A DNA stretch of 56,839 nucleotides, counting the filler, from Sluysia triapertura (taxonomy: Eukaryota), in assembly GCA_046118255.1 (NCBI GenBank). It is 4 parts of 4 records of this genome, joined end to end, with 100 filler letters (N's around TTAATTAATTAA, not from the genome) between each part and the next. Parts side by side here need not be neighbours in the genome. Positions count along the whole stretch, not along the records: positions 11,788 to 23,833 come from JBJNIA010145165.1; 3 more parts are not named here. The stretch is one strand, 5' to 3'. This document shows, piece by piece, positions 3,008-23,833 of this stretch. A program made the translations under genes and the position numbers. Position 1 is the first letter of the stretch; the number at the start of each line of letters is the position of its first letter. The notes beneath the pieces were generated by a model that made no database searches, was not told the DNA's origin, and saw only the letters and a list, made by a program, of their open reading frames with translations.

Positions 3008-3058
3008 AAATCCTACGATCTAGCCTTAGCTCGTAAGCATAGAAACGTAGGCTAAATC
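3008..3058 (+). ncRNA. Bulged hairpin motif, copy 2 (diverged)
   Basis: AAAT-CCTACG-A-TCTA-[GCCTTAGCTCGTAAGCA]-TAGA-AA-CGTAGG-CTAAATC; GATCC..GGCTC companion hairpin 154 nt upstream (2858-2880). Confidence 0.5.
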
Positions 3059-11787: not shown

Positions 11788-14700
11788 TACACCTTGCATT
11801 CATTTTTATTTTATTAATAAAGTTTTCGAAGTTATTTTGTTTAATTTGAGATACTCACTAACCATTTTTAGTAATTTTCACTATTAAAAAGTAACATTTT
11901 TACGCAAGAGAGATTTTTACGATTAAAAGATTTACTCAGCTAAAAGTATTTTTCGTACAGTTTAAATTTATTTCTCATAATTTTGGTCTTAATAAAAGAA
12001 TTTGTTCATTTAAAACACTTTATGTGCATAGGAATTTCTTTTATAATCAAAAGTCTTGAAGAAACGTCTTCTGCGTATTTAAATCATTGACTTCAAGAGA
12101 ACCCATTAACTAAATTTATATTTGCTAGCATATAAGTTGTTAGGAGATATAAAAACTCAGCAAAACATTTTATTTAATATTAATATTGAATATTGTGTTA
12201 TTATTTACAATTTCATTATTTAATTATTATTATTTTACTTATTATTATTAGTGTCATTATCGTTAGCCTTTGTATTCATTATGTGTTTTTCGTTGTGACA
12301 TTTGCCAAGCAGTAAATATATTTTGTTTGTTTTTAATTTTACTTTAATGTAAAGCTGTTGAAAATATTCTGAGTGTTGTGGTCATCACTAATCATCACAT
12401 TTTCAAAAATATCAATAAGTGAAACCAATTGAAATAATGTGATAAACAATCGAGTAAATTTTGTATTTTAATTTATTGCTTAAATGGTTTTTAGTCACAA
12501 AAAATTAAGTTAGATAATATTCTCATCAGTCACAAAAGTAATTTACTAATAATAATCATCAAATTTTTATTTAATAATAATAATAGTATGGCAAAGTCAT
12601 TATTTTTCCTAGTTAAATGTTAAGTAAATTAATTGAAATGAAAAATCAATTAGGTGCTATAAAAATTGAAGAGAGAGTTAGGAAGATAAGTTTTCGATTT
12701 ATTTATTTAAAAAAGCACCTACTTCTCAAAATTTGTCTTTACGTGTGTGTTCACTTATACTGTATTTTTTATATTCTTGCGAAAGATGTGTCTTTATGAT
12801 TTAAGTGTTTATTAGCTAAGTTTTTTTAACTTTGCTGAGGATTATATGTTACTCTTTATTCTAAATTTGTTAGGTAACTATTCCTTTATTTTTAATATTA
12901 TTTTAAAATTATTGTAAAATTAAAAAAGCATTCCCCTATGTAAGGAATGAATCTTGAGTTAATGTAATCCTTCTTTACTTTTCTAGATCAATCAAAACAA
13001 CAAATCGAAAAGCTAAGGTGCATTATTCAAGTAATAATAATAGAATAACACAATATTAAAAGGTTAACAAAATAACTTTTTGATATAATACACGAAACGT
13101 ATATTAATAACTAATAAAATATGTGGCATTATGTATAGCTTAATTTAGCATAATATATTTTACAAAGTGATTTTATGACTGACTTAAGCTAGCTAAGAAT
13201 TATGAAGTATCTATGTAAATAAGTAAGGTGAAAACTAACAACAAAAACTTAGGAATTTCTACAAAGAATGTATAAAAATTGTTGTCATCAACAAATCAGG
13301 AACTCGGTTGTAAATTGCTCGAAATGAATGATAGGTGCTGTCTGAATATTTTTTCATAAAAAATGAAAATGAATCAATCGGTAGCTCATGTAAGTTTTGT
13401 AAAAATTAGTTATTTATTTTTGTGTGCCTTTTGAGTTATATAAGTGCTATATATATGAGGTTCATTTTATTACTCACATTTATTATTTTATAGAAGTATT
13501 TAATCTAATAAAAACATTTAATTTCGTAATCGTTTTTCCATAAACATTTAATTTCATTCATTTATTTAACATTTGGATTAGATTTATGCAACAAAATGCG
13601 TTAATTCTAGTGATTAACTAAATTTTTATTTGCATTATTTTTGTAATTTCTTAATTTAAAATTTTCTAATTAATATACTTAAATATGAAAGCTTCTATAG
13701 CAGCTTCTATAATTCTGATAGGATCAAGTTTTTGAAAGATTGAAAAATTAAATAGTATGGAAGTATATGATTGACTGAATTTTGTGACCCAAATTCAGAA
13801 TGATATTTTACCATATAAGACAAAATTTTTTAAAATTTTTAATAGTTCATTTATTAAAACTCAAAAAACTTAATTAATGTGCCTAGTATTATCAATGTTT
13901 AAATCAAGATAATTTATGTTTTTGTAAGATTTAAAAGTTTAAAGCATGAAAACGTAAAGTTATTAAATAAATATTTTAATATTTTTAATAAAATTTTAAT
14001 ATTTTGTAAAAAGTTTTGTTTTGTTTTAATATAAAAATATAAATATAATATAGAATAATATTAATAATTTTAAAAATGTGTAGGTAATATTAATTATTAT
14101 AATTTATAAATAAAAATTATTTAGAAAATTATATCTTTATGCTTATACTTAAATATTTAAGAATAAAATATAAAAATAATTATATAAAATAAAAAGTTTC
14201 TACTTACGCGCCATCTTAGATTTTCACTTAATATGAAAGGAAGCTCATAATCAATTCAAGGGCCAAAACTCCATCTCACAATAAAGCCACAACAGAGCTC
14301 AACAAGGAAACGATAAAGATATTTAATTTTGGTAAATTACTCTTTTTCAAGTTTAAGGATATTTAAATTTGGTGAATTACTATTTGGATTCAACTTGGAA
14401 TTTGACTGCTACTCATGCTTATATATTCCATGGCCTTAAGTTTTTTATTTTAAGTATTGGCTTCACTTTGGTGAAACTTAAAATACACAAAACCTGTAGA
14501 TTCACAATATCAAACTACTTTTAAATATATAATTGATTAATATTAGAGTAAAACCTCTAATACTTACGTTATTAGTTAAATTTATACTTTTATATATTAT
14601 TGTTCAAAGTTCAGTGTATTTAATAGTTTTGTCATTTACTATTGATATTTTTGTAATAAACTTTCATATTGTTCACAAGTTAGTTATTTTATTAAGTGAA

Positions 14701-17700
14701 AAGTAAATAAACCCTCAAAAGTTTTCTAAGATTTTGTTGAAATCGTATTCTACAACTATGCCCTCTTTGAGTGTAAGATGTAGATAGTAAGCAGACCCAG
14801 TGTATTAAAATAACATTTTGCTATGTAAGTTCAAGTAAGAAAAAATACCACAGTATTTTTATATTCGATATTGCATATTTTAAAATATGAAGTTAATACA
14901 CAGATATTGTACTAGTCATTGTATAAAATATTTAGATGAATTTTAAAAAGGTCAAAATTTGAGCTAAAGATACTTTACATATAATATGATATATGTTTTA
15001 AAATAATATTGACAAATTTTTATATATGACATCTTTAAGAATTTATACAGAAATATATGCATACACAGAAATAAATGTACAAGCAAAACAATTATTAATT
15101 TATTATTTATCATTACAATTCAATAAAATATTTAATGACATGAATGATTTTTAAGATTAAAATGTATATAGTATACGAATTGTATAAGAATATTACTTAC
15201 AGATATTTTTTAATAATCATCATATTAATTTATGCAAATCTTGAAGGATTCGCCATACCAATCAACAATAAGTGAATTTTGCTCACCATTTATCTACATA
15301 ATGCATGATGAAGAATACCATGAAGGGCATGAACTATAAAATTCTGAATTATTTTTAGTCGAACTAAAACTGAATATTTTAGTTTTGCTGGTGATAAATA
15401 CACAGAAAATATTTTAGATAAGATTGAGGAACTTTCAGAACTAGTAATCTCGTCAATTTACCATTATAAAAAGCAAGTGAATCTCTGATTAATTTTGAAC
15501 AATTTCAGTTTAGCAATGAAGTCATTATCATTGTAGTGGTAAATATTTAGAAACGTAATGTAATTTAATTAGAAAAATTCGACATTTTTATTTTATTGTG
15601 TGAATTAAGTGAATTAATTAATTAGGAAATAACATGTATCTGCAAAGTTCAGAAACATTACACTAACTGTAAGTCTCTTTTAAACTTAGGAATTTTATTC
15701 TATCGATTCTTAATAATGTTTAGAAAGCAGTCTAGACAAACTAATCGACAAATAATTTTCTCTTAAAGTACTTACATTAAAAAGTATGATTGTATTACTC
15801 TGTGCAAAACAAAATCTTAAATAATTACTGCTAAAGTAAAATAATACAAATAATGATTATGATAATACGGCTTTAAAACTTAAGCACTATTCGATTCATA
15901 ACTACAGATAATAAACTAATTTGCAATTACATATATATAAAACCACAACATAACGATTTTTTATGATGCCTTTAAAGTTAGGTCTTTTCTATTGCCTGAT
16001 AGTTTTGAGGAATTTAGAAAAATTTCCATAAATGAAAATAAATTAGCTCCATTCAACTCTTTATCATTTCCTAGTTTAAGCCTCCTAATAGCATTTAAGT
16101 CAGAAGATGATGTGTTACTAATTTTAATTGATCCTGATTTGTTTAATTTATTTGAAAATGCGTAAGAAATCGAATGACATTATGCAAAAGGTGATAATAA
16201 TACTAGATATTAATAATTTGTATGGTTGACTTCATAAGGATTTATGAAGTAAATAAAAATTTACAAAATACTGTAAATATTGAAATAAGTTATACATTCG
16301 AAGTTGACTTGATCATTCCATACGATGCTTTAGATGACTTACCTAAATTTAAATCTTAAATTTAAATATTCAATCATATTCAGAAGTTTAAAATATAATT
16401 ATAATATAATAAAAATGCGAAATAATGTAAAATTTTGGCGCGTGACAAAGAAAAAAATTGAAGAAATTCAATTAATGTAACAGACTATTTGACAAGAGTC
16501 TGATTAGGAAAACAAGTAGATTTTTTTAGACAGACCACATTACATTAGTCATAATGTTTTTCCATCTTAGTAAGTTTCGTATGTATCAATTACAATACGA
16601 AGAATTGCAAATATATCTTAAGACTGAAATTATATCTGGCAACACTGATAGTTTCTTTCTGAGACGTATTAGTTTTAATATAAATATTAAACGAAATGAA
16701 ATTATTAAATATAAATTGTTGGATAAAAGTATATAATTTCTTCAGCCGCCGCATAGAATTATTCTATCTTAATTCTGTATTTTGATTAATAAAATTACAA
16801 ATAACAACAGCGTAAGCAACTTCGTAAGAACAACTAATTATTATATGAAAAGGATAGTCTTAAAAATATAAACGAAGTAATATATTGATTTTGTATATAA
16901 ATATAGATATTAGTTTGAATAAGCTTTCCACATGTAATTATTTGTTATTATTTTTTTGTTATAATTATTAATTAAATTATTTTAACAAAGCTGTAAATAA
17001 AAGGATTTATTTAATAACTAAACTAAATAAATAAACTGCTTTTAATTGAAAATAAAGTATTCCGAAACAATCAAAACAACATTTATGATAAATTAGGTTA
17101 TAAAATTAAATAAAAATGACGAAAAACAAATTTAATTTACAATTATTTTTTCTTAGATATATGATTTATCAAAGGAAATTAAAAATAAAATATTAACTTA
17201 AAAATCATTATGATGATCATATACCAAAATATTAAATTTTTGATTATGTGATTTTTCAGAAAAATATATTAAATATTATAAATAAGAATTTTATTTCATC
17301 GTATAACCTAAAATTTCTGTCAAATGACAAAGTATAAGTTGTATTATGTCATCTCAAATATAGTTATCCGTTACTTTTGATGGGATTATTTCTTCAAAAA
17401 TAAAATATTATAAATTGGGTTCGGATATACTCCATATATTATAATGTCTAGTAGGTGTATCTGTGACATCAATAACATATTCAAATCAAAGATCATTATA
17501 ATTATACATGTTATAAATGAAACGACTCAAAAACATGATTATATTATTACATATAAACGAATCAAGCATAAAGAAACAAAAAAAACAAAAAAGTCAGAGA
17601 CATCTACTAGATTTTAATAAGTTAAAATTTTTAATTGTTTAAAATACTGCCTCAAAATATTCAAATAATTTAAGCAGCACTTTAAAATTGACTTAAAACA

Positions 17701-19313
17701 AATAATTTTATAGTAAATAGATTAATTTAAATCTCGCAAAGATTATCTTTTATAACTCGATATATTTGTTCATTTGATTGTGTTTGATTTATTCAATTCT
17801 ATTGTTGTCTTTAAAAAAACTATTTTTAAAAATTTATCGTAATTGTTTTTATCACTCGGAAATATAAATTATATATCAAAAATTCTACAATTCACTGAAT
17901 ATTTATACTCACTTCTAAATGTTTTGTGATTGGATACTCAATCATCTTTTATCAAAAATATTTTTCAAAAACAAATTCAGTATAATCATTTCTTCAATAT
18001 CATTGACAATACTAATAATTTACAACTCATTACTATGTATTGTGTAATTATGTAATTAATAATTATTAATTATTATTAACTTTATTTACAATTTATTGTT
18101 AGTCCTTTATTATACTATTAGTATTTTCGGATCCCAACACTTTTACATAATTGTAGTCAGGCATCACATAGTAATAGTTGTAATAATATTAATTGTAACA
18201 ATTATAATAACATTAGTTATAACAACAACGTGTAGTATATCGATACAATTAACAGATTAACTCCAATGAACGTTGGTCTACCATTATTATCGATTAACGT
18301 TTTTTCATAATTACGTATCAAATATAATTTATTGTTAAGTGAAATGTGGTTTTCTTTAAACGTGTTAACCCTACAGTCATAAATGAAATGAGTGAATTCG
18401 CTTGTGATTCGAAACTTACGCAGTTAAGGGCTATTCCACAGGATTTCAATGATCAGAAATAAAGTATAGATCCTATTTCTTTTCTTAATTACACTTGCAT
18501 TAATTCTTTTGTTAATCTTACAAAAGATTTGGAAATTCTACAATCTACAAAGATAAAATCCACTGCCTTATGAAGAATCAATGAATAATATAACAGCGCC
18601 ACTACATGCAAGCAATATGTCACTCACTTATGGTAGCATGGGAAGATGGCAATTATGAATATTCGTGTTATTAGCCATGATAGCATGTGTTTATTCACAA
18701 AATTTGATATCGGATTTATCATTTTCCTTGAAATATATGCAGACCTTCAATCAAATCTGTCACTAGGAATAAGTATTTCAAGAGAATATTATAAGTTTAG
18801 AACAAGTAATATATCTTATTCGAAATATATAAGTATAATATATCTATGACCAACTTAAATCAAATTTATAAAAAACACCAACTAACTTTTCAAAACTTTA
18901 CCTTTACCTTAAAAACAAACGAATGTCCGCAAGCAGTTGAAACTGTTAAAAGAATTACAAATTACCTACAAATCTCAACCTCATCGGAATCTATAAAATT
19001 ATTTTTAATAATTATGCCATTTTTAGTTCTTGTTAAATGTCAAAATTCAAGATTAAAAATAGCACGAATAAATCAACCGGCTATTTGCAAACAATTATCT
19101 TCAGACGCTATTTATAAAGTACCCGTATGGATACCAATTTTTATGGAACGCCGCAGTTTTAAATTTGGACTTAGGACTTATAAAACTTACGAAAATTTTA
19201 TTTATCCCTATGAAGGTGATTACGATATTTTATACGAAATAACAACAGACCAATCTGATGGTAACGAAACACTTTTATAAGATAACAACAAAGAAAATAA
19301 TTTCAGTTTTCCT

Positions 19314-19592
19314 ATGATCCAGAAATTTTACCTATGGCAGAATATAAAAATCAACGGCAGTCCAGTGCATGCACTTATCGATACTGCCGCGCCATATACC
19401 ATAAGATGCTTTGAATCTTTGAAAATACAGGAACTGCAATTTATTCGATCATGGTCTACCCATAATTGGTGTAATAACAATAGTGGAAACAGTAGACCGT
19501 AAATTATTAATAACATTTTTGGTAATTAGAAATTGCCCTACATCGTGCATTATTGGATTGGATACTATTCCAGCTGTTGAATATTATCAATG
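19314..19592 (+). pseudogene. Retropepsin-type aspartic protease remnant
   Basis: NIKINGSPVHALIDTAAPYTI (D-T-G/A active-site pattern) and, after a frameshift, TFLVIRNCPTSCIIGLD (IxGxD motif). Confidence 0.65.
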
Positions 19593-19865
19593 AATGTAAA
19601 TTTTGTTAACAATGATCATTGATCATTGATAAAATTATGAATATAACTTGTACTTGTTTATGATTATTTATTATTTGAAAAAATTTTTATTTGATTTTAT
19701 ATTTGTTTGATTTAAAAAATTTTTTATTTATTAACCTTTTGGAATCAAAGTATGTTATTTTAAATTTTATTGAATTTTATTAATTTATATGTTATTTTAA
19801 ATTTTATCAAATATTTCATTAATTTTAAATAATGAAAATTTTTAATTAAAAATTTTTTTTAGTTT

Positions 19866-19908
19866 GTTTTAATTTGACCTCTCAAGGTCAGGTTAAACAC
19901 TATTTAAA
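19866..19908 (+). promoter_or_regulatory. TGACC..AAGGTCA inverted repeat followed by a TATA-like box
   Basis: AATTTGACCT-CTCA-AGGTCAGGTT then TATTTAAA; homologous to 55624-55666(-). Confidence 0.4.
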
Positions 19909-20574
19909 TGAAAGCTTTTTAACATAAACTCACAATTATTTTCACAATTATTATTTTGTAAAGATCACACAGTTATTTCACAGTTACTTTGTAAACATAG
20001 CTATTTTGTAAAAATTATACAGTTGTTTTGTAAAAATTTTTGAATCTTCGATTTTAATCATTTGGAAAAAACAGTTGTCATTAATAAAAGTCACGTTAGT
20101 ATAATTTATATTAAGAATTGATATATTAATATCAAAAGAAAAATACAGATTAAAATTTTAATACATAACTGAACCATATAAGGGTTCAAGGTAAAATAGA
20201 TTTTAAAATTCATTAAACATTGTGTAACTAGTTATATCTAGTTAGAGGTAAAATTTATCATCATTTTTATTTTTTATATATTATTATATTGTTAATTTTT
20301 GTATAAATAAATTATTGAATAACTAAATTATTTTCTTTTATTTATTATAAAATCTTTAAAATACTTAATCAGATTTCAAACACTAGATTGTAATTCTAGT
20401 AAGTAATATTTATTTGATTGATCCCATATAACGGGATTTGCGTAACTTCATTTAAATTTTTTAATATTTAAATTATTTTTTGAATACAGATAGTATAACT
20501 CCAGATTCGAGACATATAACTAACCTTGATTTATAGTGTTAAGTAAACTTAGTTAAACTCTTACTTTATATTAA

Positions 20575-20623
20575 AAATCCAACGTCTGGCTCTCGCTGGT
20601 AAGTCCAGTACGTTGGTGAACTC
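20575..20623 (+). ncRNA. Bulged hairpin motif, copy 3
   Basis: AAAT-CCAACGT-CTGG-[CTCTCGCTGGTAAGT]-CCAG-T-ACGTTGG-TGAACTC; 48/49 identical to 54966-55014(-). Confidence 0.65.
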
Positions 20624-20676
20624 ACTTATAAGTTTTTAAATAAACTTCTCTTCAATTATTCTCACAGATATATAAA

Positions 20677-22519
20677 TTGTTGGGACTAAATGTAAATGAC
20701 ATTTTATTGTCGCTGCCAGAAAATTATGAGAAAAAAGTTGTCTCAGATTTTTGTTATATGCTAAAGGATTTTATTAACAAACCTAGTCTTCAAAAGGCAG
20801 TTATACATGATTTTTGGATTGTTTCTTATTCTTCAAGACAACAAAATATTTATACATAGAACAAATGATCATAGAGTTATTTCCATCATTGATAATACGA
20901 AGAGCATTTCTAATTTTTCTTACAATATCCGAGAATTATCTCTTGATACATCTCAAATGAAATCTAACTCAGAAACAAATTATCACCAATTAAATAACAA
21001 TGTGCTACCACAACCAACGATTAACGATAGTAAAGCTAACCAAAAACAATTAGTGCGAAATCGTATTTCTTCTAAAGTAAAACTAATTAATTGTCATTGG
21101 AACCAAGATAAATCGAGAAACGAATTACATGATGAGTTACGAATTCTTGGTGCATCTGAATGTATTAAATCATTTCACGATTATGTTTTTATTGGAACGC
21201 AAAAAAATATGTTTTCGTTTACATTTCAGCATCAAGTAACCAATTTTTATGTAATGTTGGTAAAGTCCAGGAACCTTTAGTCTTCCAAATGTCAGAATTT
21301 CTTGGAATTAAAATCAATGAACCTGTTGAATTTATAGATAAAAATGTTAGTGTATGGAATGATGGAACTTTGAAGTGGTCCCCTTCACTATCAAAACTCA
21401 TGCAAACTTTAAGTTTAAACAATAGTTGCAATTGTATTTGTCGTTATAGAGATTGAATATTTGTGTTAGTAGACGATAATTAAATATATGCATTAGTTGA
21501 TACTTCAAGTTTACAGTTAGTTCAAGCTTATTCACAGAATGAGAATGTCGAGTTAGCTTTAATGTTAGCAAAATTAGCATACTTACTTGGTGAAGACACG
21601 AAAGTAACTTCAAAAATTAATCGTCGTTAAACAAGAATGCTGTTCAAAAGATAGTTCGAAAGATAATTCAGTATATTCATGGATATGACAACAGTTCTAT
21701 TTGATCTTCTCGCTCCTTCCTCTATGTTATGTCCAGAGAAATTAAATAAAGAATTAACTAGGCGTTTAAATGAAGTTTTCAGTAAAAAAGAAAACACTCA
21801 AGTTATGTACGCGTTGATAGATTTTTTGTTAAATGGCGAAATGATCTTCAGAAACGATCAAGTGGTGATAATATTTCGGAACCAACAAATCAAGCGCAGC
21901 AGTCATTCATGCTAAAGAGTTCTTGTCGAGTCATGAACAATTAATCAAGTATAATCTACTAAGAGATTCTATAACTCGGCTCAATCCTCGACGACAAGTT
22001 CTCGCAATTACGGACACAGGTCCGCTCAGAAGTTATCCTACTATAAACACTTCGTCTATGTTATTTTCTGTGGAAGTTACAGATTACTTCGTCTACGAAC
22101 ATTACTTAAAAGTAATTAGAAATTTTGATGTTATTAACTTCATTTTTATTATTGATGATCTATTAGAAGACGGAAAACTTACTCGGGAAAACATTAGTAG
22201 AAAAAGAATTTCAAGAATAAATATTAAATTGTCTGTTAAATCTAATAAAACTTTTGTTAATTTTATTGAGTTCTCGATTGATTACAACATTGAATTAAAC
22301 TTAAACAGAAAGATCATTGAATTTTTAACCTTACAATGTTTAATATCAGTTAAAATAAATAAAACGAAGAAGTCAATGTATCATCGTAGCTTTAATTTTA
22401 AAATAAAACTTTTAATTTATAAAAACCATATAAACATTACCACATTTAATACATTTTCTTTTATTTGTAAAGTCACTTATTACTTTAATCGATTAGTGTA
22501 TCATTCATTGTATTATTAA
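20677..22519 (+). pseudogene. Long fragmented ORF (roughly 600 codons over several frames), unknown family
   Basis: Successive co-oriented ORFs 20677-20859, 20807-21280, 21679-21915 and 21923-22519 with coding-like composition, starting ~50 nt after the hairpin. Confidence 0.45.
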
Positions 22520-22767
22520 TAAACTTAAAAATGGTTAATATACTTATTGATTCAATTTTGAATATTTAAAAAACTAAATAACGAGTGCTGCTTATAATCA
22601 TACAGTTGTAAACAGTGACTTAAAATTTTCAATATTAGATTCGATTTAGTAAGGATACCGTTTTTAATTATGCTGTAGTAAAATCTGACACAAAAATACT
22701 AAAAATTATTAATTAAAGGGCTTACGATTTTTTTATATTAATTAAACCTCCACTGATTATTTTTGCT

Positions 22768-22819
22768 GATACCTACAAACTAGCCCTTATGTATATAAGA
22801 CTAGGATCGTAAGGGACTC
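22768..22819 (+). ncRNA. Possible degenerate hairpin motif, copy 4
   Basis: CCTAC-AAA-CTAG-[CCCTTATGTATATAAGA]-CTAG-GATC-GTAAGG-GACTC; GATTC..GGAT companion at 22638-22660. Confidence 0.3.
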
Positions 22820-23304
22820 ACGTTTCACATCATAATATAAAACATAAAATTTCGCTATAATATTTCGTAATGCTTGATTCATTTGATTTTTATTTAACAA
22901 TTGGAAACAGATTATATTTTTCTTGCAATTTTTGCTCAATTAAACAACTTACGCCACATCATTATTTTTCCTTTGAGAAAAATTTTCCTGCAGAGACTTA
23001 CAAAACAATTCTAAAAATACAAAACTAATATTAAAATCGATAAAGCATATCATTAAACTAATAAGTTTAAACCAATAAGGAAAACTGCATATGATACATA
23101 TATTAGCTGTTATATTAGCCTAGTTATACAACTAGATAGTAGATTTATTAAGATAAGCTTTACTTGAGATGATCGTTTTGCAGTAATATTTTCATGCGCT
23201 ATAGCAAATAAAAAACTTAACTATTAATGATATTTTATTTTTATTTCTATTGAATAATTTAAAATTAATTAATAATTAATGTGTTTTTATTTTTTACTTA
23301 TGAG

Positions 23305-23580
23305 TTAATTATTTATTATAAAAATAATGATTATAATATATTTACTTGAACGTTTATTTTCTATTTGATGCTTACTACAAGAAAATATTGTTAATAATTT
23401 CTGATAGCTAGGACATATACGTCGATAATATGCACGATATTTTCGTGAAAATATTGCATAAATCAATGGGTTGAATGCACCGCTAAGTTGAGTAGAGAGA
23501 CCGAGAAAATGAACTGTTAAAATTGGCATAGGAGATTGTGAAGCCGAATTACCAAGATGAAGTAGTATAAAGCATATGTG
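23305..23580 (-). CDS. Rhodopsin-family GPCR C-terminal fragment (end of TM6, TM7, helix 8); last exon or pseudogene
   Basis: HICFILLHLG...LSTQLSGAFNPLIYAIFSRKYRAYY: NPxxY motif followed by a helix-8 pattern. Confidence 0.65.
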   Translation of the reverse strand, partial: HICFILLHLGNSASQSPMPILTVHFLGLSTQLSGAFNPLIYAIFSRKYRAYYRRICPSYQKLLTIFSCSKHQIENKRSSKYIIIIIFIINN

Positions 23581-23696
23581 TTTTAGAAAAAGTTGATTCA
23601 GTAATTTGAGTAAAATAAACCATCATTGTCAAAATAATATTAGTATTATCACCCATAAAAATGTTAAATCATTTTACAAAATAAACTTAGACATAA

Positions 23697-23833
23697 ATAG
23701 AAAGATAGGTTGATAATAAGGATAAAAGAAATAATAATAATGATAACAATTACGTGGATATTATGTTTATTAATACAAAATTGTTGACGTAAGAATTTAT
23801 TATGAAATTTATTATAAAAGTTGTTACTATATG
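23697..23833. repeat. Interspersed AT-rich repeat shared with 11217-11329
   Basis: Direct sequence similarity, same orientation. Confidence 0.75.

What the first reader, a model, noticed from the sequence alone, without database searches (positions are those of the whole stretch)
20575..20623. Recurring covarying bulged hairpin with a 5' splice-site-like loop: candidate new structured RNA family
Seen: five clear copies on three separate contigs (761-812+, 3008-3058+, 20575-20623+, 54966-55014-, 56792-56839-) plus a degenerate one (22768-22819+). They share AAAU, an outer stem CC(A/U)ACG//CGU(U/A)GG with a compensatory A-U to U-A swap, a small 3' bulge or internal loop, an inner stem, a loop containing GUAA(G), and a YGRACYC tail. 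The inner stem changes sequence but keeps pairing (CUGG/CCAG; CAGACG/CGUUUG versus UGAACG/CGUUUA; UCUA/UAGA). Copies 3 and 5 are 48/49 identical while their flanks align only patchily, which implies selection. Known: UG|GUAAGU and AG|GUAAGA fit the U1 5' splice-site consensus; retroviruses display their major splice donor in a stem-loop, and the HBV epsilon element is a bulged hairpin used for packaging and priming. Inference: a cis-acting RNA signal of a mobile element or virus (splice donor or U1 trap, packaging/priming signal, or part of an IRES). I do not recognise it as a named family.
Basis: partly seen in the sequence, partly recalled or inferred. Interest (0 to 1): 0.85.

Follow-up and report, generated by a model that had tools for sequence, protein, structure and literature searches.

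The report
Repeated hairpin holding a splice donor
A short GC-rich bulged hairpin in very AT-rich, animal-like DNA is real and has a decayed sister copy 2.2 kb away. It most likely marks the leader exon and splice donor of a repeated, now broken transcription unit, but no relative could be found in any database I could reach.

Summary
The hairpin at 20579-20616 (+) is real. It is the most stable 55-nt fold of the 12-kb piece on either strand (z -3.6 and -4.2) and a 57% GC island in 24% GC DNA. The 'degenerate copy' at 22772-22821 is a true but decayed relative. A pattern built from the stems and tail finds only these two sites, and none in 300 shuffles. Two of its pairs are changed on both sides, and the loop GT is lost. 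The four other copies lie outside my piece and could not be checked.

Rfam 15 has no match. Viral, metagenome and prokaryote DNA collections and the literature hold no relative. The flanking ORFs have no homologue.

The loop GGTAAGT is a near-consensus 5' splice site. Sixty-nine nt downstream on the same strand lies one of the three best acceptor-like sites of 1008 in the piece (0.014 expected in such a span). My best reading (0.38) is a leader-exon/donor hairpin of a roughly 2-kb multicopy unit whose ORFs are broken here.

Rivals are an SL RNA gene (no Sm site found), a transposon terminal hairpin, a minus-strand small RNA gene, and no function. Interest is moderate. Deciding needs the host assembly and RNA-seq.

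The parts
20575..20625 (+). Hairpin module A: AAAT, bulged hairpin, tail TGAACTCAC
   Evidence: Read. Fold. Best fold and GC island of the piece.
20579..20616 (+). The hairpin proper: 7-bp outer stem, 4-bp middle stem and 2 further pairs, with 3' bulges at 20609 and 20604
   Evidence: Minimum-free-energy and centroid structures are identical. All pairs in the two main stems are Watson-Crick, so this copy does not tell the strand.
20598..20604 (+). GGTAAGT in the apical loop, with a candidate splice donor between 20598 and 20599
   Evidence: One of two GGTAAGT in the piece. One of 10 sites within one mismatch of the 5' splice-site consensus on both strands.
20599..20667 (+). Candidate 69-nt leader intron (inferred, not shown)
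   Evidence: Starts at the loop GT and ends at a CAG preceded by 16 of 20 pyrimidines. Only 3 of 1008 AG sites are as good, and 0.014 would be expected in a 110-nt span.
20617..20625 (+). Conserved tail. ACTCAC is one base from the classical branch-site box (inference only)
   Evidence: Shared by A and B. It lies only about 25 nt from the donor, which is short for a branch site.
22768..22821 (+). Decayed copy B: same layout, one mismatch and one extra base in the outer stem, and the loop GT lost (ATAAGA)
20644..22516 (+). GC-richer ORF stretch between A and B, on the same strand as the hairpins. It is broken by at least three frame changes and two stop-containing gaps.
   Evidence: Stop-free runs of 171 and 215 codons are far longer than AT-rich DNA gives by chance. 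No Pfam, PHROG, PDB or protein-database relative.
20680..20688 (-). TCCCAACAA, which ends exactly 60 nt upstream of the stem on the minus strand. It resembles an snRNA-type promoter element.
   Evidence: TCCCAA occurs only twice in the piece. It is a 7-of-8 match to DUSE (PMC3188802) and to the invariant half of the insect PSEA (PMC1761439). This lead was found after the fact.
20573..20577 (-). Run of five T one base after the stem on the minus strand. A mirror run of five T lies at 20633-20637 on the plus strand.
   Evidence: Read. It would fit a Pol III terminator on either strand, so it does not settle the strand.

Best explanation
The module works as RNA on the + strand. It is the junction of a short non-coding leader exon and a short leader intron, at the head of a multicopy transcription unit of about 2 kb.

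The transcript would start at or shortly upstream of AAAT. The last 20 nt or so of the leader pair with the first 18 nt of the intron, so the donor G|GTAAGT sits in the apical loop of a bulged hairpin. Splicing would join 20598 to 20668 and remove 69 nt. That leads into the + strand ORFs that fill the space up to the next, decayed, copy.

The hairpin would set how accessible the donor is to U1 snRNP, through masking or timed exposure. That would explain why the stems covary while the loop letters stay fixed.

Shown: the hairpin, its rarity, the donor-like and acceptor-like signals, the kinship of A and B, and the broken ORFs. Inferred: transcription, the strand, splicing, and what kind of unit it is (a gene family or a mobile element).
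For: - The hairpin is the strongest local fold and a GC island.
- The loop is a near-consensus donor, one of 10 such sites in 24 kb.
- A top-0.3% acceptor-like site lies 69 nt downstream on the same strand, where 0.014 would be expected by chance.
- Copy B has decayed in stem, donor and acceptor together, as expected of a dead copy of a splicing signal.
- A and B differ by two both-side pair changes (direct reading).
- ORFs on the same strand, too long for chance, start just after the candidate acceptor.
I could not check this.
- No ribozyme, snRNA or other Rfam family explains it.
Against: - Only one intact copy could be studied.
- There is no expression data, so the strand is not proven. The minus strand folds as well.
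- The leader has no ATG, and the downstream reading frames are broken with no relatives, so the 'unit' is undefined.
- Flanks of A and B, and the stretches before and after them, are not alike. Units in tandem would therefore be very old, or not homologous.
Confidence: 0.38

Rival explanations
1. It is a spliced-leader (SL) RNA gene. The 24-nt stretch 20575-20598 would be a leader that is trans-spliced onto many mRNAs. The hairpin would be stem-loop I of the SL RNA, and the copies with different inner stems would be polymorphic SL variants in small gene clusters.
For: The exon pairs with the start of the intron and the donor sits in that first hairpin, which is the layout expected of SL RNA stem-loop I (my own knowledge; SL RNA criteria in PMC7986045). 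A 24-nt leader is within the known size range. The same paper reports polymorphic SLs from many genes, with further copies that may not be functional, in Trichinella.
Against: There is no Sm-site motif (AT{4,6}G or the Hydra variant) 20-60 nt after the donor. No significant second or third stem-loop appears: the 136-nt fold has z -2.2, carried by the first hairpin. There is no Rfam SL family hit. The leader string is absent from the literature and from the SLIDR tables. A good cis acceptor 69 nt downstream is not expected in an SL RNA gene. The host is not known to trans-splice.
Confidence: 0.15
2. It is the terminal recognition hairpin of a transposable element: a 3' stem-loop of a retroposon read by its reverse transcriptase, or a DNA-level hairpin at the end of a rolling-circle element. 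In that case the 5' splice-site look of the loop is incidental.
For: The hairpin folds well as DNA too. Both A and B lie downstream of + strand ORF remnants: B lies about 250 nt after the end of the 20644-22516 stretch, and A lies 1 kb after a gag/protease-like relic. The kilobase before A is rich in small hairpins.
Against: No reverse transcriptase, endonuclease, Rep/helicase or transposase domain appears in any frame of the piece. There are no terminal repeats, direct or inverted. No CTRR end follows the hairpin, as a canonical Helitron would have (direct reading; the criterion is from my own knowledge). This reading does not explain a loop kept as a splice-donor consensus, nor the matching acceptor.
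Confidence: 0.2
3. It is a small RNA gene on the minus strand. An snRNA-type promoter element about 60 nt upstream would drive a hairpin RNA of about 50 nt that starts at GTGAGTTCA, shows ACTTACC in its loop and ends at the run of T.
For: TCCCAACAA ends exactly 60 nt before the stem. TCCCAA occurs only twice in 24 kb, which gives about 1 in 1000 for that place before correcting for the after-the-fact choice. It matches DUSE and the insect PSEA half-site at 7 of 8 places. A T5 run follows the stem. The minus strand folds slightly better. A conserved short core with patchy flanks is typical of small RNA genes.
Against: The motif was noticed after the fact. Copy B has no such motif at that distance (direct reading). 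A T5 run is also present on the + strand. There is no TATA at the place expected for an insect Pol III snRNA promoter (direct reading). Copy density is too high for known small RNA families. Features of Class I RNA are not met.
Confidence: 0.1
4. It has no function of its own: a GC-rich palindrome spread by duplication or gene conversion, with its splice-site likeness due to chance.
For: Only one intact copy was seen here. There is no relative in any database. The region holds other small palindromes in excess: 7 against 2.5 expected.
Against: Two both-side compensatory changes between A and B keep the pairing. The joint presence of rare donor-like and acceptor-like sites is unlikely by chance.
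Confidence: 0.1

Closest known systems
Stem-loop I of spliced-leader RNAs (nematodes, flatworms, Hydra, kinetoplastids)
   Same: A short 5' exon is base-paired with the first bases of the intron, so the GU donor lies inside the first hairpin. The genes are multicopy and often clustered, with variant leaders and pseudogenes (PMC7986045).
   Different: No Sm-binding motif and no further stem-loops were found. A strong cis acceptor lies 69 nt downstream. There is no evidence of trans-splicing in the unknown host.
Structured 5' leaders of retroelements and retroviruses that show the major splice donor in a hairpin, and the leader introns of Penelope-like elements (recalled from the literature, not tested here)
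   Same: A donor sits in the loop of a conserved hairpin upstream of the element's ORFs. Copies lie in one orientation at about unit length.
   Different: No LTR or pseudo-LTR pair, no primer-binding site that could be tested, and no RT, GIY-YIG or integrase domain in the ORFs. No hammerhead or other ribozyme motif.
Class I RNAs of dictyostelid amoebae (PMC7919456, PMC3188802)
   Same: A GC-richer RNA of about 50 nt in a 22% GC genome. A short terminal stem covaries while a loop motif stays fixed. A CCCA-type element lies about 60 nt upstream (minus-strand reading). The loop CTTACCAGC resembles their CTTACAGC.
   Different: It does not start with AAG or end with CUGU. The motif is not next to the 5' stem half. 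The upstream element matches at only 7 of 8 places. The neighbouring GPCR-like exon points to an animal host.
3' stem-loops of LINE/SINE partners and 3' hairpins of Helitrons (recalled, not tested against sequences)
   Same: A hairpin of about 40-50 nt is the only part shared by otherwise unlike repeat copies. Stems covary between subfamilies.
   Different: No RT or Rep/helicase nearby, no CTRR end and no tail repeat. The loop is a splice-donor consensus with a matching acceptor.

Membership tests
Spliced-leader RNA | Short 5' exon ending at a GU donor that lies in the first stem-loop | tested here: met
   A 24-nt stretch (20575-20598) precedes G|GTAAGT in the loop of the hairpin.
Spliced-leader RNA | Sm-binding site (AU4-6G or a known variant) 20-60 nt after the donor, between stem-loops (PMC7986045) | tested here: not met
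   The regular-expression search finds none in 20624-20664. The only U-run there is flanked by G and A and can pair into a small AU hairpin.
Spliced-leader RNA | The leader is found at the 5' ends of many unrelated mRNAs | not testable with these tools
   There are no transcript data for the unknown host. The leader string is absent from papers and from the SLIDR tables.
Any Rfam 15 family (snRNAs, U7, SL1/SL2, hammerhead, twister, HDV-like, and others) | A covariance-model match | tested here: not met
   No match at E<=1 over the whole piece. One irrelevant match at E=8 over 20520-20700.
Dictyostelid Class I RNA | Starts AAG and ends CUGU, with an 11-12-nt motif directly 3' of the 5' stem half | tested here: not met
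   Direct reading of both strands against PMC7919456 and PMC3188802.
Dictyostelid Class I RNA | DUSE [AT]CCCA[AT]AA about 60 nt upstream | tested here: inconclusive
   TCCCAACA matches at 7 of 8 places, and TCCCAACAA ends 60 nt before the stem on the minus strand.
LTR retrotransposon or retrovirus-like leader | Flanking long terminal repeats, with gag-pol downstream | tested here: not met
   No direct repeat pair around the unit. No RT, RNase H or integrase in any frame. Only a weak gag/protease-like relic upstream.
LTR retrotransposon or retrovirus-like leader | A primer-binding site complementary to the 3' end of a host tRNA | not testable with these tools
   TGGTGAACTCAC (20614-20625) starts with TGG, but the piece has no tRNA gene and the host is unknown.
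Helitron 3' end | A hairpin about 10-12 nt before a CTRR terminus, with Rep/helicase in autonomous copies | tested here: not met
   No CTRR in the 16 nt after the stem (direct reading). No helicase or Rep hit. The criterion is from my own knowledge.
Origin of a circular Rep-encoding ssDNA element | A stem-loop with a nonanucleotide nick site, plus a Rep ORF | tested here: not met
   No Rep or helicase family hit in any frame. No viral contig relative of the ORFs.
microRNA precursor | A stem of about 22 bp or more | tested here: not met
   Only 13 pairs in all.

The most novel reading that the evidence does not exclude
The module is the gene of a new class of small leader RNA in an AT-rich animal. 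It would be SL-RNA-like, with polymorphic leaders of about 24 nt that keep stem-loop I by covariation but lack a canonical Sm site. On the other strand, it would instead be a hairpin RNA of about 50 nt that shows a sequence like the 5' end of U1 snRNA in its loop.
Probability: 0.2. Interest if true: 0.65.

Novelty: new member of a known kind. Interest (0 to 1): 0.4.

Why it matters
If the reading holds, this is a compact natural case of a splice donor kept inside a covarying hairpin at the head of a multicopy unit. It would be a useful system for asking how RNA structure gates U1 access. It would also be a handy marker for annotating a repeat or gene family that current protein and RNA libraries miss entirely. 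If it proved to be an SL-like RNA, it would add a lineage or a new leader type to the patchy map of trans-splicing. If it is only a transposon end, it is ordinary.

Tried and rejected
- Rfam, over the whole piece and a lax local scan: nothing.
- tRNA scan: none.
- Alternative genetic codes: no gain.
- Exact and degenerate DNA patterns:
  - Viral contigs gave 0.
  - Metagenome contigs gave 24 hits, about the number I expected by chance. All came from contigs of 39-68% GC with no GGTAAG loop.
  - Prokaryote genomes gave 0, then one chance hit in a Barnesiella coding region.
- Literature string searches: only unrelated primers. SLIDR supplementary tables: no match.
- Protein searches with the two long ORFs and the gag-like frame: no hit.
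- The same ORFs in viral contigs: none. PDB: nothing below E=0.1. PHROGs: nothing meaningful.
- AlphaFold of the 171-residue frame: pLDDT 38, so no fold search was run.
- Exact look-up of ten ORF products: none in the collection.
- An impression that the last ORF carries reverse-transcriptase motifs B-D was not borne out by Pfam or PDB and is dropped.
- LTR, tandem-repeat and target-duplication readings: no repeat between the stretches before and after A.
- No covariance model was built. With one intact and one decayed copy that MAFFT cannot put in register, it would add nothing.

Full report
**Setting.** The piece (11788-23833) is 20-31% GC. It has no tRNA gene, no Rfam match at E<=1 and few ORFs. 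Other genetic codes do not open it up. The one neighbour that can be placed is a class-A GPCR-like terminal exon with an NPxxY-helix 8 motif at 23308-23622 (-). It scores E=2e-3 against PDB receptors. It also scores E=4e-5 and 1.5e-4 against two unnamed proteins among 1.8 billion representatives. The host is therefore probably a very AT-rich animal. It is not human. I could not name it.

**The observation.** The copy at 20575-20625 is as described. It reads AAAT, then a 7-bp outer stem, a 4-bp middle stem, two further pairs, two single-base 3' bulges, GGTAAGT in the apical loop, and the tail TGAACTCAC.
- It folds at -17.7 kcal/mol (z -3.6) on the + strand, at -18.3 (z -4.2) on the - strand, and with z -4.15 as DNA.
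- It is the best 55-nt fold of the piece on both strands and a 57.5% GC island in 24% GC DNA.
- All pairs in its main stems are Watson-Crick, so this copy does not reveal the strand.

**The second copy.** The 'degenerate copy' folds weakly and blastn misses it. A pattern of the two stem halves (one substitution allowed in each) plus the ACTCAC tail finds exactly these two sites, and none in 300 shuffles. Read directly, B keeps the layout, with one mismatch and one extra base in the outer stem. Two pairs are changed on both sides. The loop reads ATAAGA where A has GTAAGT. The flanks of A and B are not alike, and neither are the stretches before and after them.

**Search for relatives.**
- Nothing turned up in viral contigs.
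- The one metagenome scan gave 24 hits, about what I had estimated chance would give. All came from contigs of 39-68% GC with no donor-like loop.
- Prokaryote genomes gave none, then one chance hit.
- Strings of the module are not in the searchable literature or in the SLIDR tables of spliced leaders.

**What lies between A and B.** 20644-22516 (+) is GC-richer and holds stop-free runs of 171 and 215 codons. Runs of that length are far beyond chance at this composition, so it is, or was, coding. It is broken by at least three frame changes and two stop-containing gaps. I give no places and made no joined reading. No piece has a Pfam, PHROG, PDB or protein-database relative. The one structure model was useless. 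One kilobase upstream of A there are weak gag-like and aspartic-protease-like frames, with at least two frame changes and one stop. No reverse transcriptase, integrase, Rep or transposase appears anywhere.

**Splicing signals.** CTG|GTAAGT matches the 5' splice-site consensus at 8 of 9 places. Only 10 sites within one mismatch exist on both strands of the piece. Sixty-nine nt downstream on the same strand is a CAG preceded by 16 of 20 pyrimidines, six of them C. Only 3 of 1008 AG sites in the piece are as good, so 0.014 would be expected in a 110-nt span. The candidate intron, 20599-20667, starts in the hairpin loop, and the ORF stretch begins right after it. By eye, the intron is a multiple of three and the leader is open in the frame of the first ORF piece, but it has no ATG. 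Copy B has neither donor nor a comparable acceptor. The tail ACTCAC is one base from the classical branch-site box, but it sits only about 25 nt from the donor. I do not lean on it.

**Best reading (0.38).** The module is a + strand leader-exon/donor hairpin at the head of a multicopy unit of about 2 kb. The structure would gate access to the donor, which would explain covarying stems around a fixed loop.

**Rivals.**
- **SL RNA gene (0.15).** The layout is that of stem-loop I and a 24-nt leader is normal. However, the Sm motif required by the usual criteria (PMC7986045) is absent. No further stem-loop stands out. A cis acceptor is also unexpected.
- **Transposon terminal hairpin (0.20).** This fits the reported copy density and the ORF remnants upstream of both copies. 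However, no element enzyme, terminal repeat or canonical end was found.
- **Minus-strand small RNA gene (0.10).** TCCCAACAA ends exactly 60 nt before the stem. It matches DUSE and the insect PSEA half-site at 7 of 8 places, and a T5 run follows the stem. However, the motif was found after the fact, B lacks it, a T5 run also follows on the + strand, and Class I RNA features are not met.
- **No function (0.10).**

2. The lists of stop-free stretches that I used as search queries and printed show where frames end in the retroelement-like relic and in the ORF stretch.
3. Stretches of N were left alone.

**Verdict.** The feature is real and structurally constrained. It is not in Rfam and has no traceable relative. 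The splice-donor reading is the best supported. The virus, packaging, priming and IRES ideas have no support here. Interest is moderate (0.4). The host assembly and its RNA-seq would settle the question quickly.

Noticed in passing
window 19600-20450 (+): The ORF-free kilobase just upstream of hairpin A holds four of the piece's seven short perfect hairpins with at least 3 G-C pairs (19610-19628, 19875-19890, 20170-20188, 20421-20437). Shuffles give 2.5 +/- 1.2 for the whole piece. Two of them share a 7-nt loop, ATATAAG and ATATAAC.
   Followed up: partly
window 18637-19590 (+): A relic of a retroelement: gag-like and aspartic-protease-like frames (DTAA and IIGLD motifs), with weak Pfam hits only (E 0.006-0.03). 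It is broken by at least two frame changes and one stop and lacks RT, RNase H and integrase altogether.
   Followed up: partly
window 23308-23622 (-): A class-A GPCR-like last exon (NPLIY followed by a helix-8 motif). It matches PDB receptors at E=2e-3, and two unnamed ENA proteins at E=4e-5 and 1.5e-4. It is the only clue to the host (an animal). The upstream exons were not found before the piece ends.
   Followed up: partly
window 20644-22516 (+): A GC-richer coding-like stretch with no relative in Pfam, PHROGs, PDB or the protein database searched with the search for homologous proteins. It could be an orphan or fast-evolving gene, or the body of an unclassified repeat.
   Followed up: yes
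window 19751-19815 and 19952-20028 (+): Two short local tandem duplications: 28 nt at 89% identity, 37 nt apart, and 27 nt at 85% identity, 50 nt apart.
   Followed up: no
window 12929-12949 (+): A small hairpin, CATTCC/GGAATG, whose loop ends in GTAAGG. It has a loop motif like A but neither its stems nor its tail, so it is probably chance.
   Followed up: partly
protein P0001 (not in the window): The top hit of the representative search is a 621-residue protein made of many copies of one unit, which the query matched in seven stretches. This is a compositional or repeat artefact, not a receptor.
   Followed up: no
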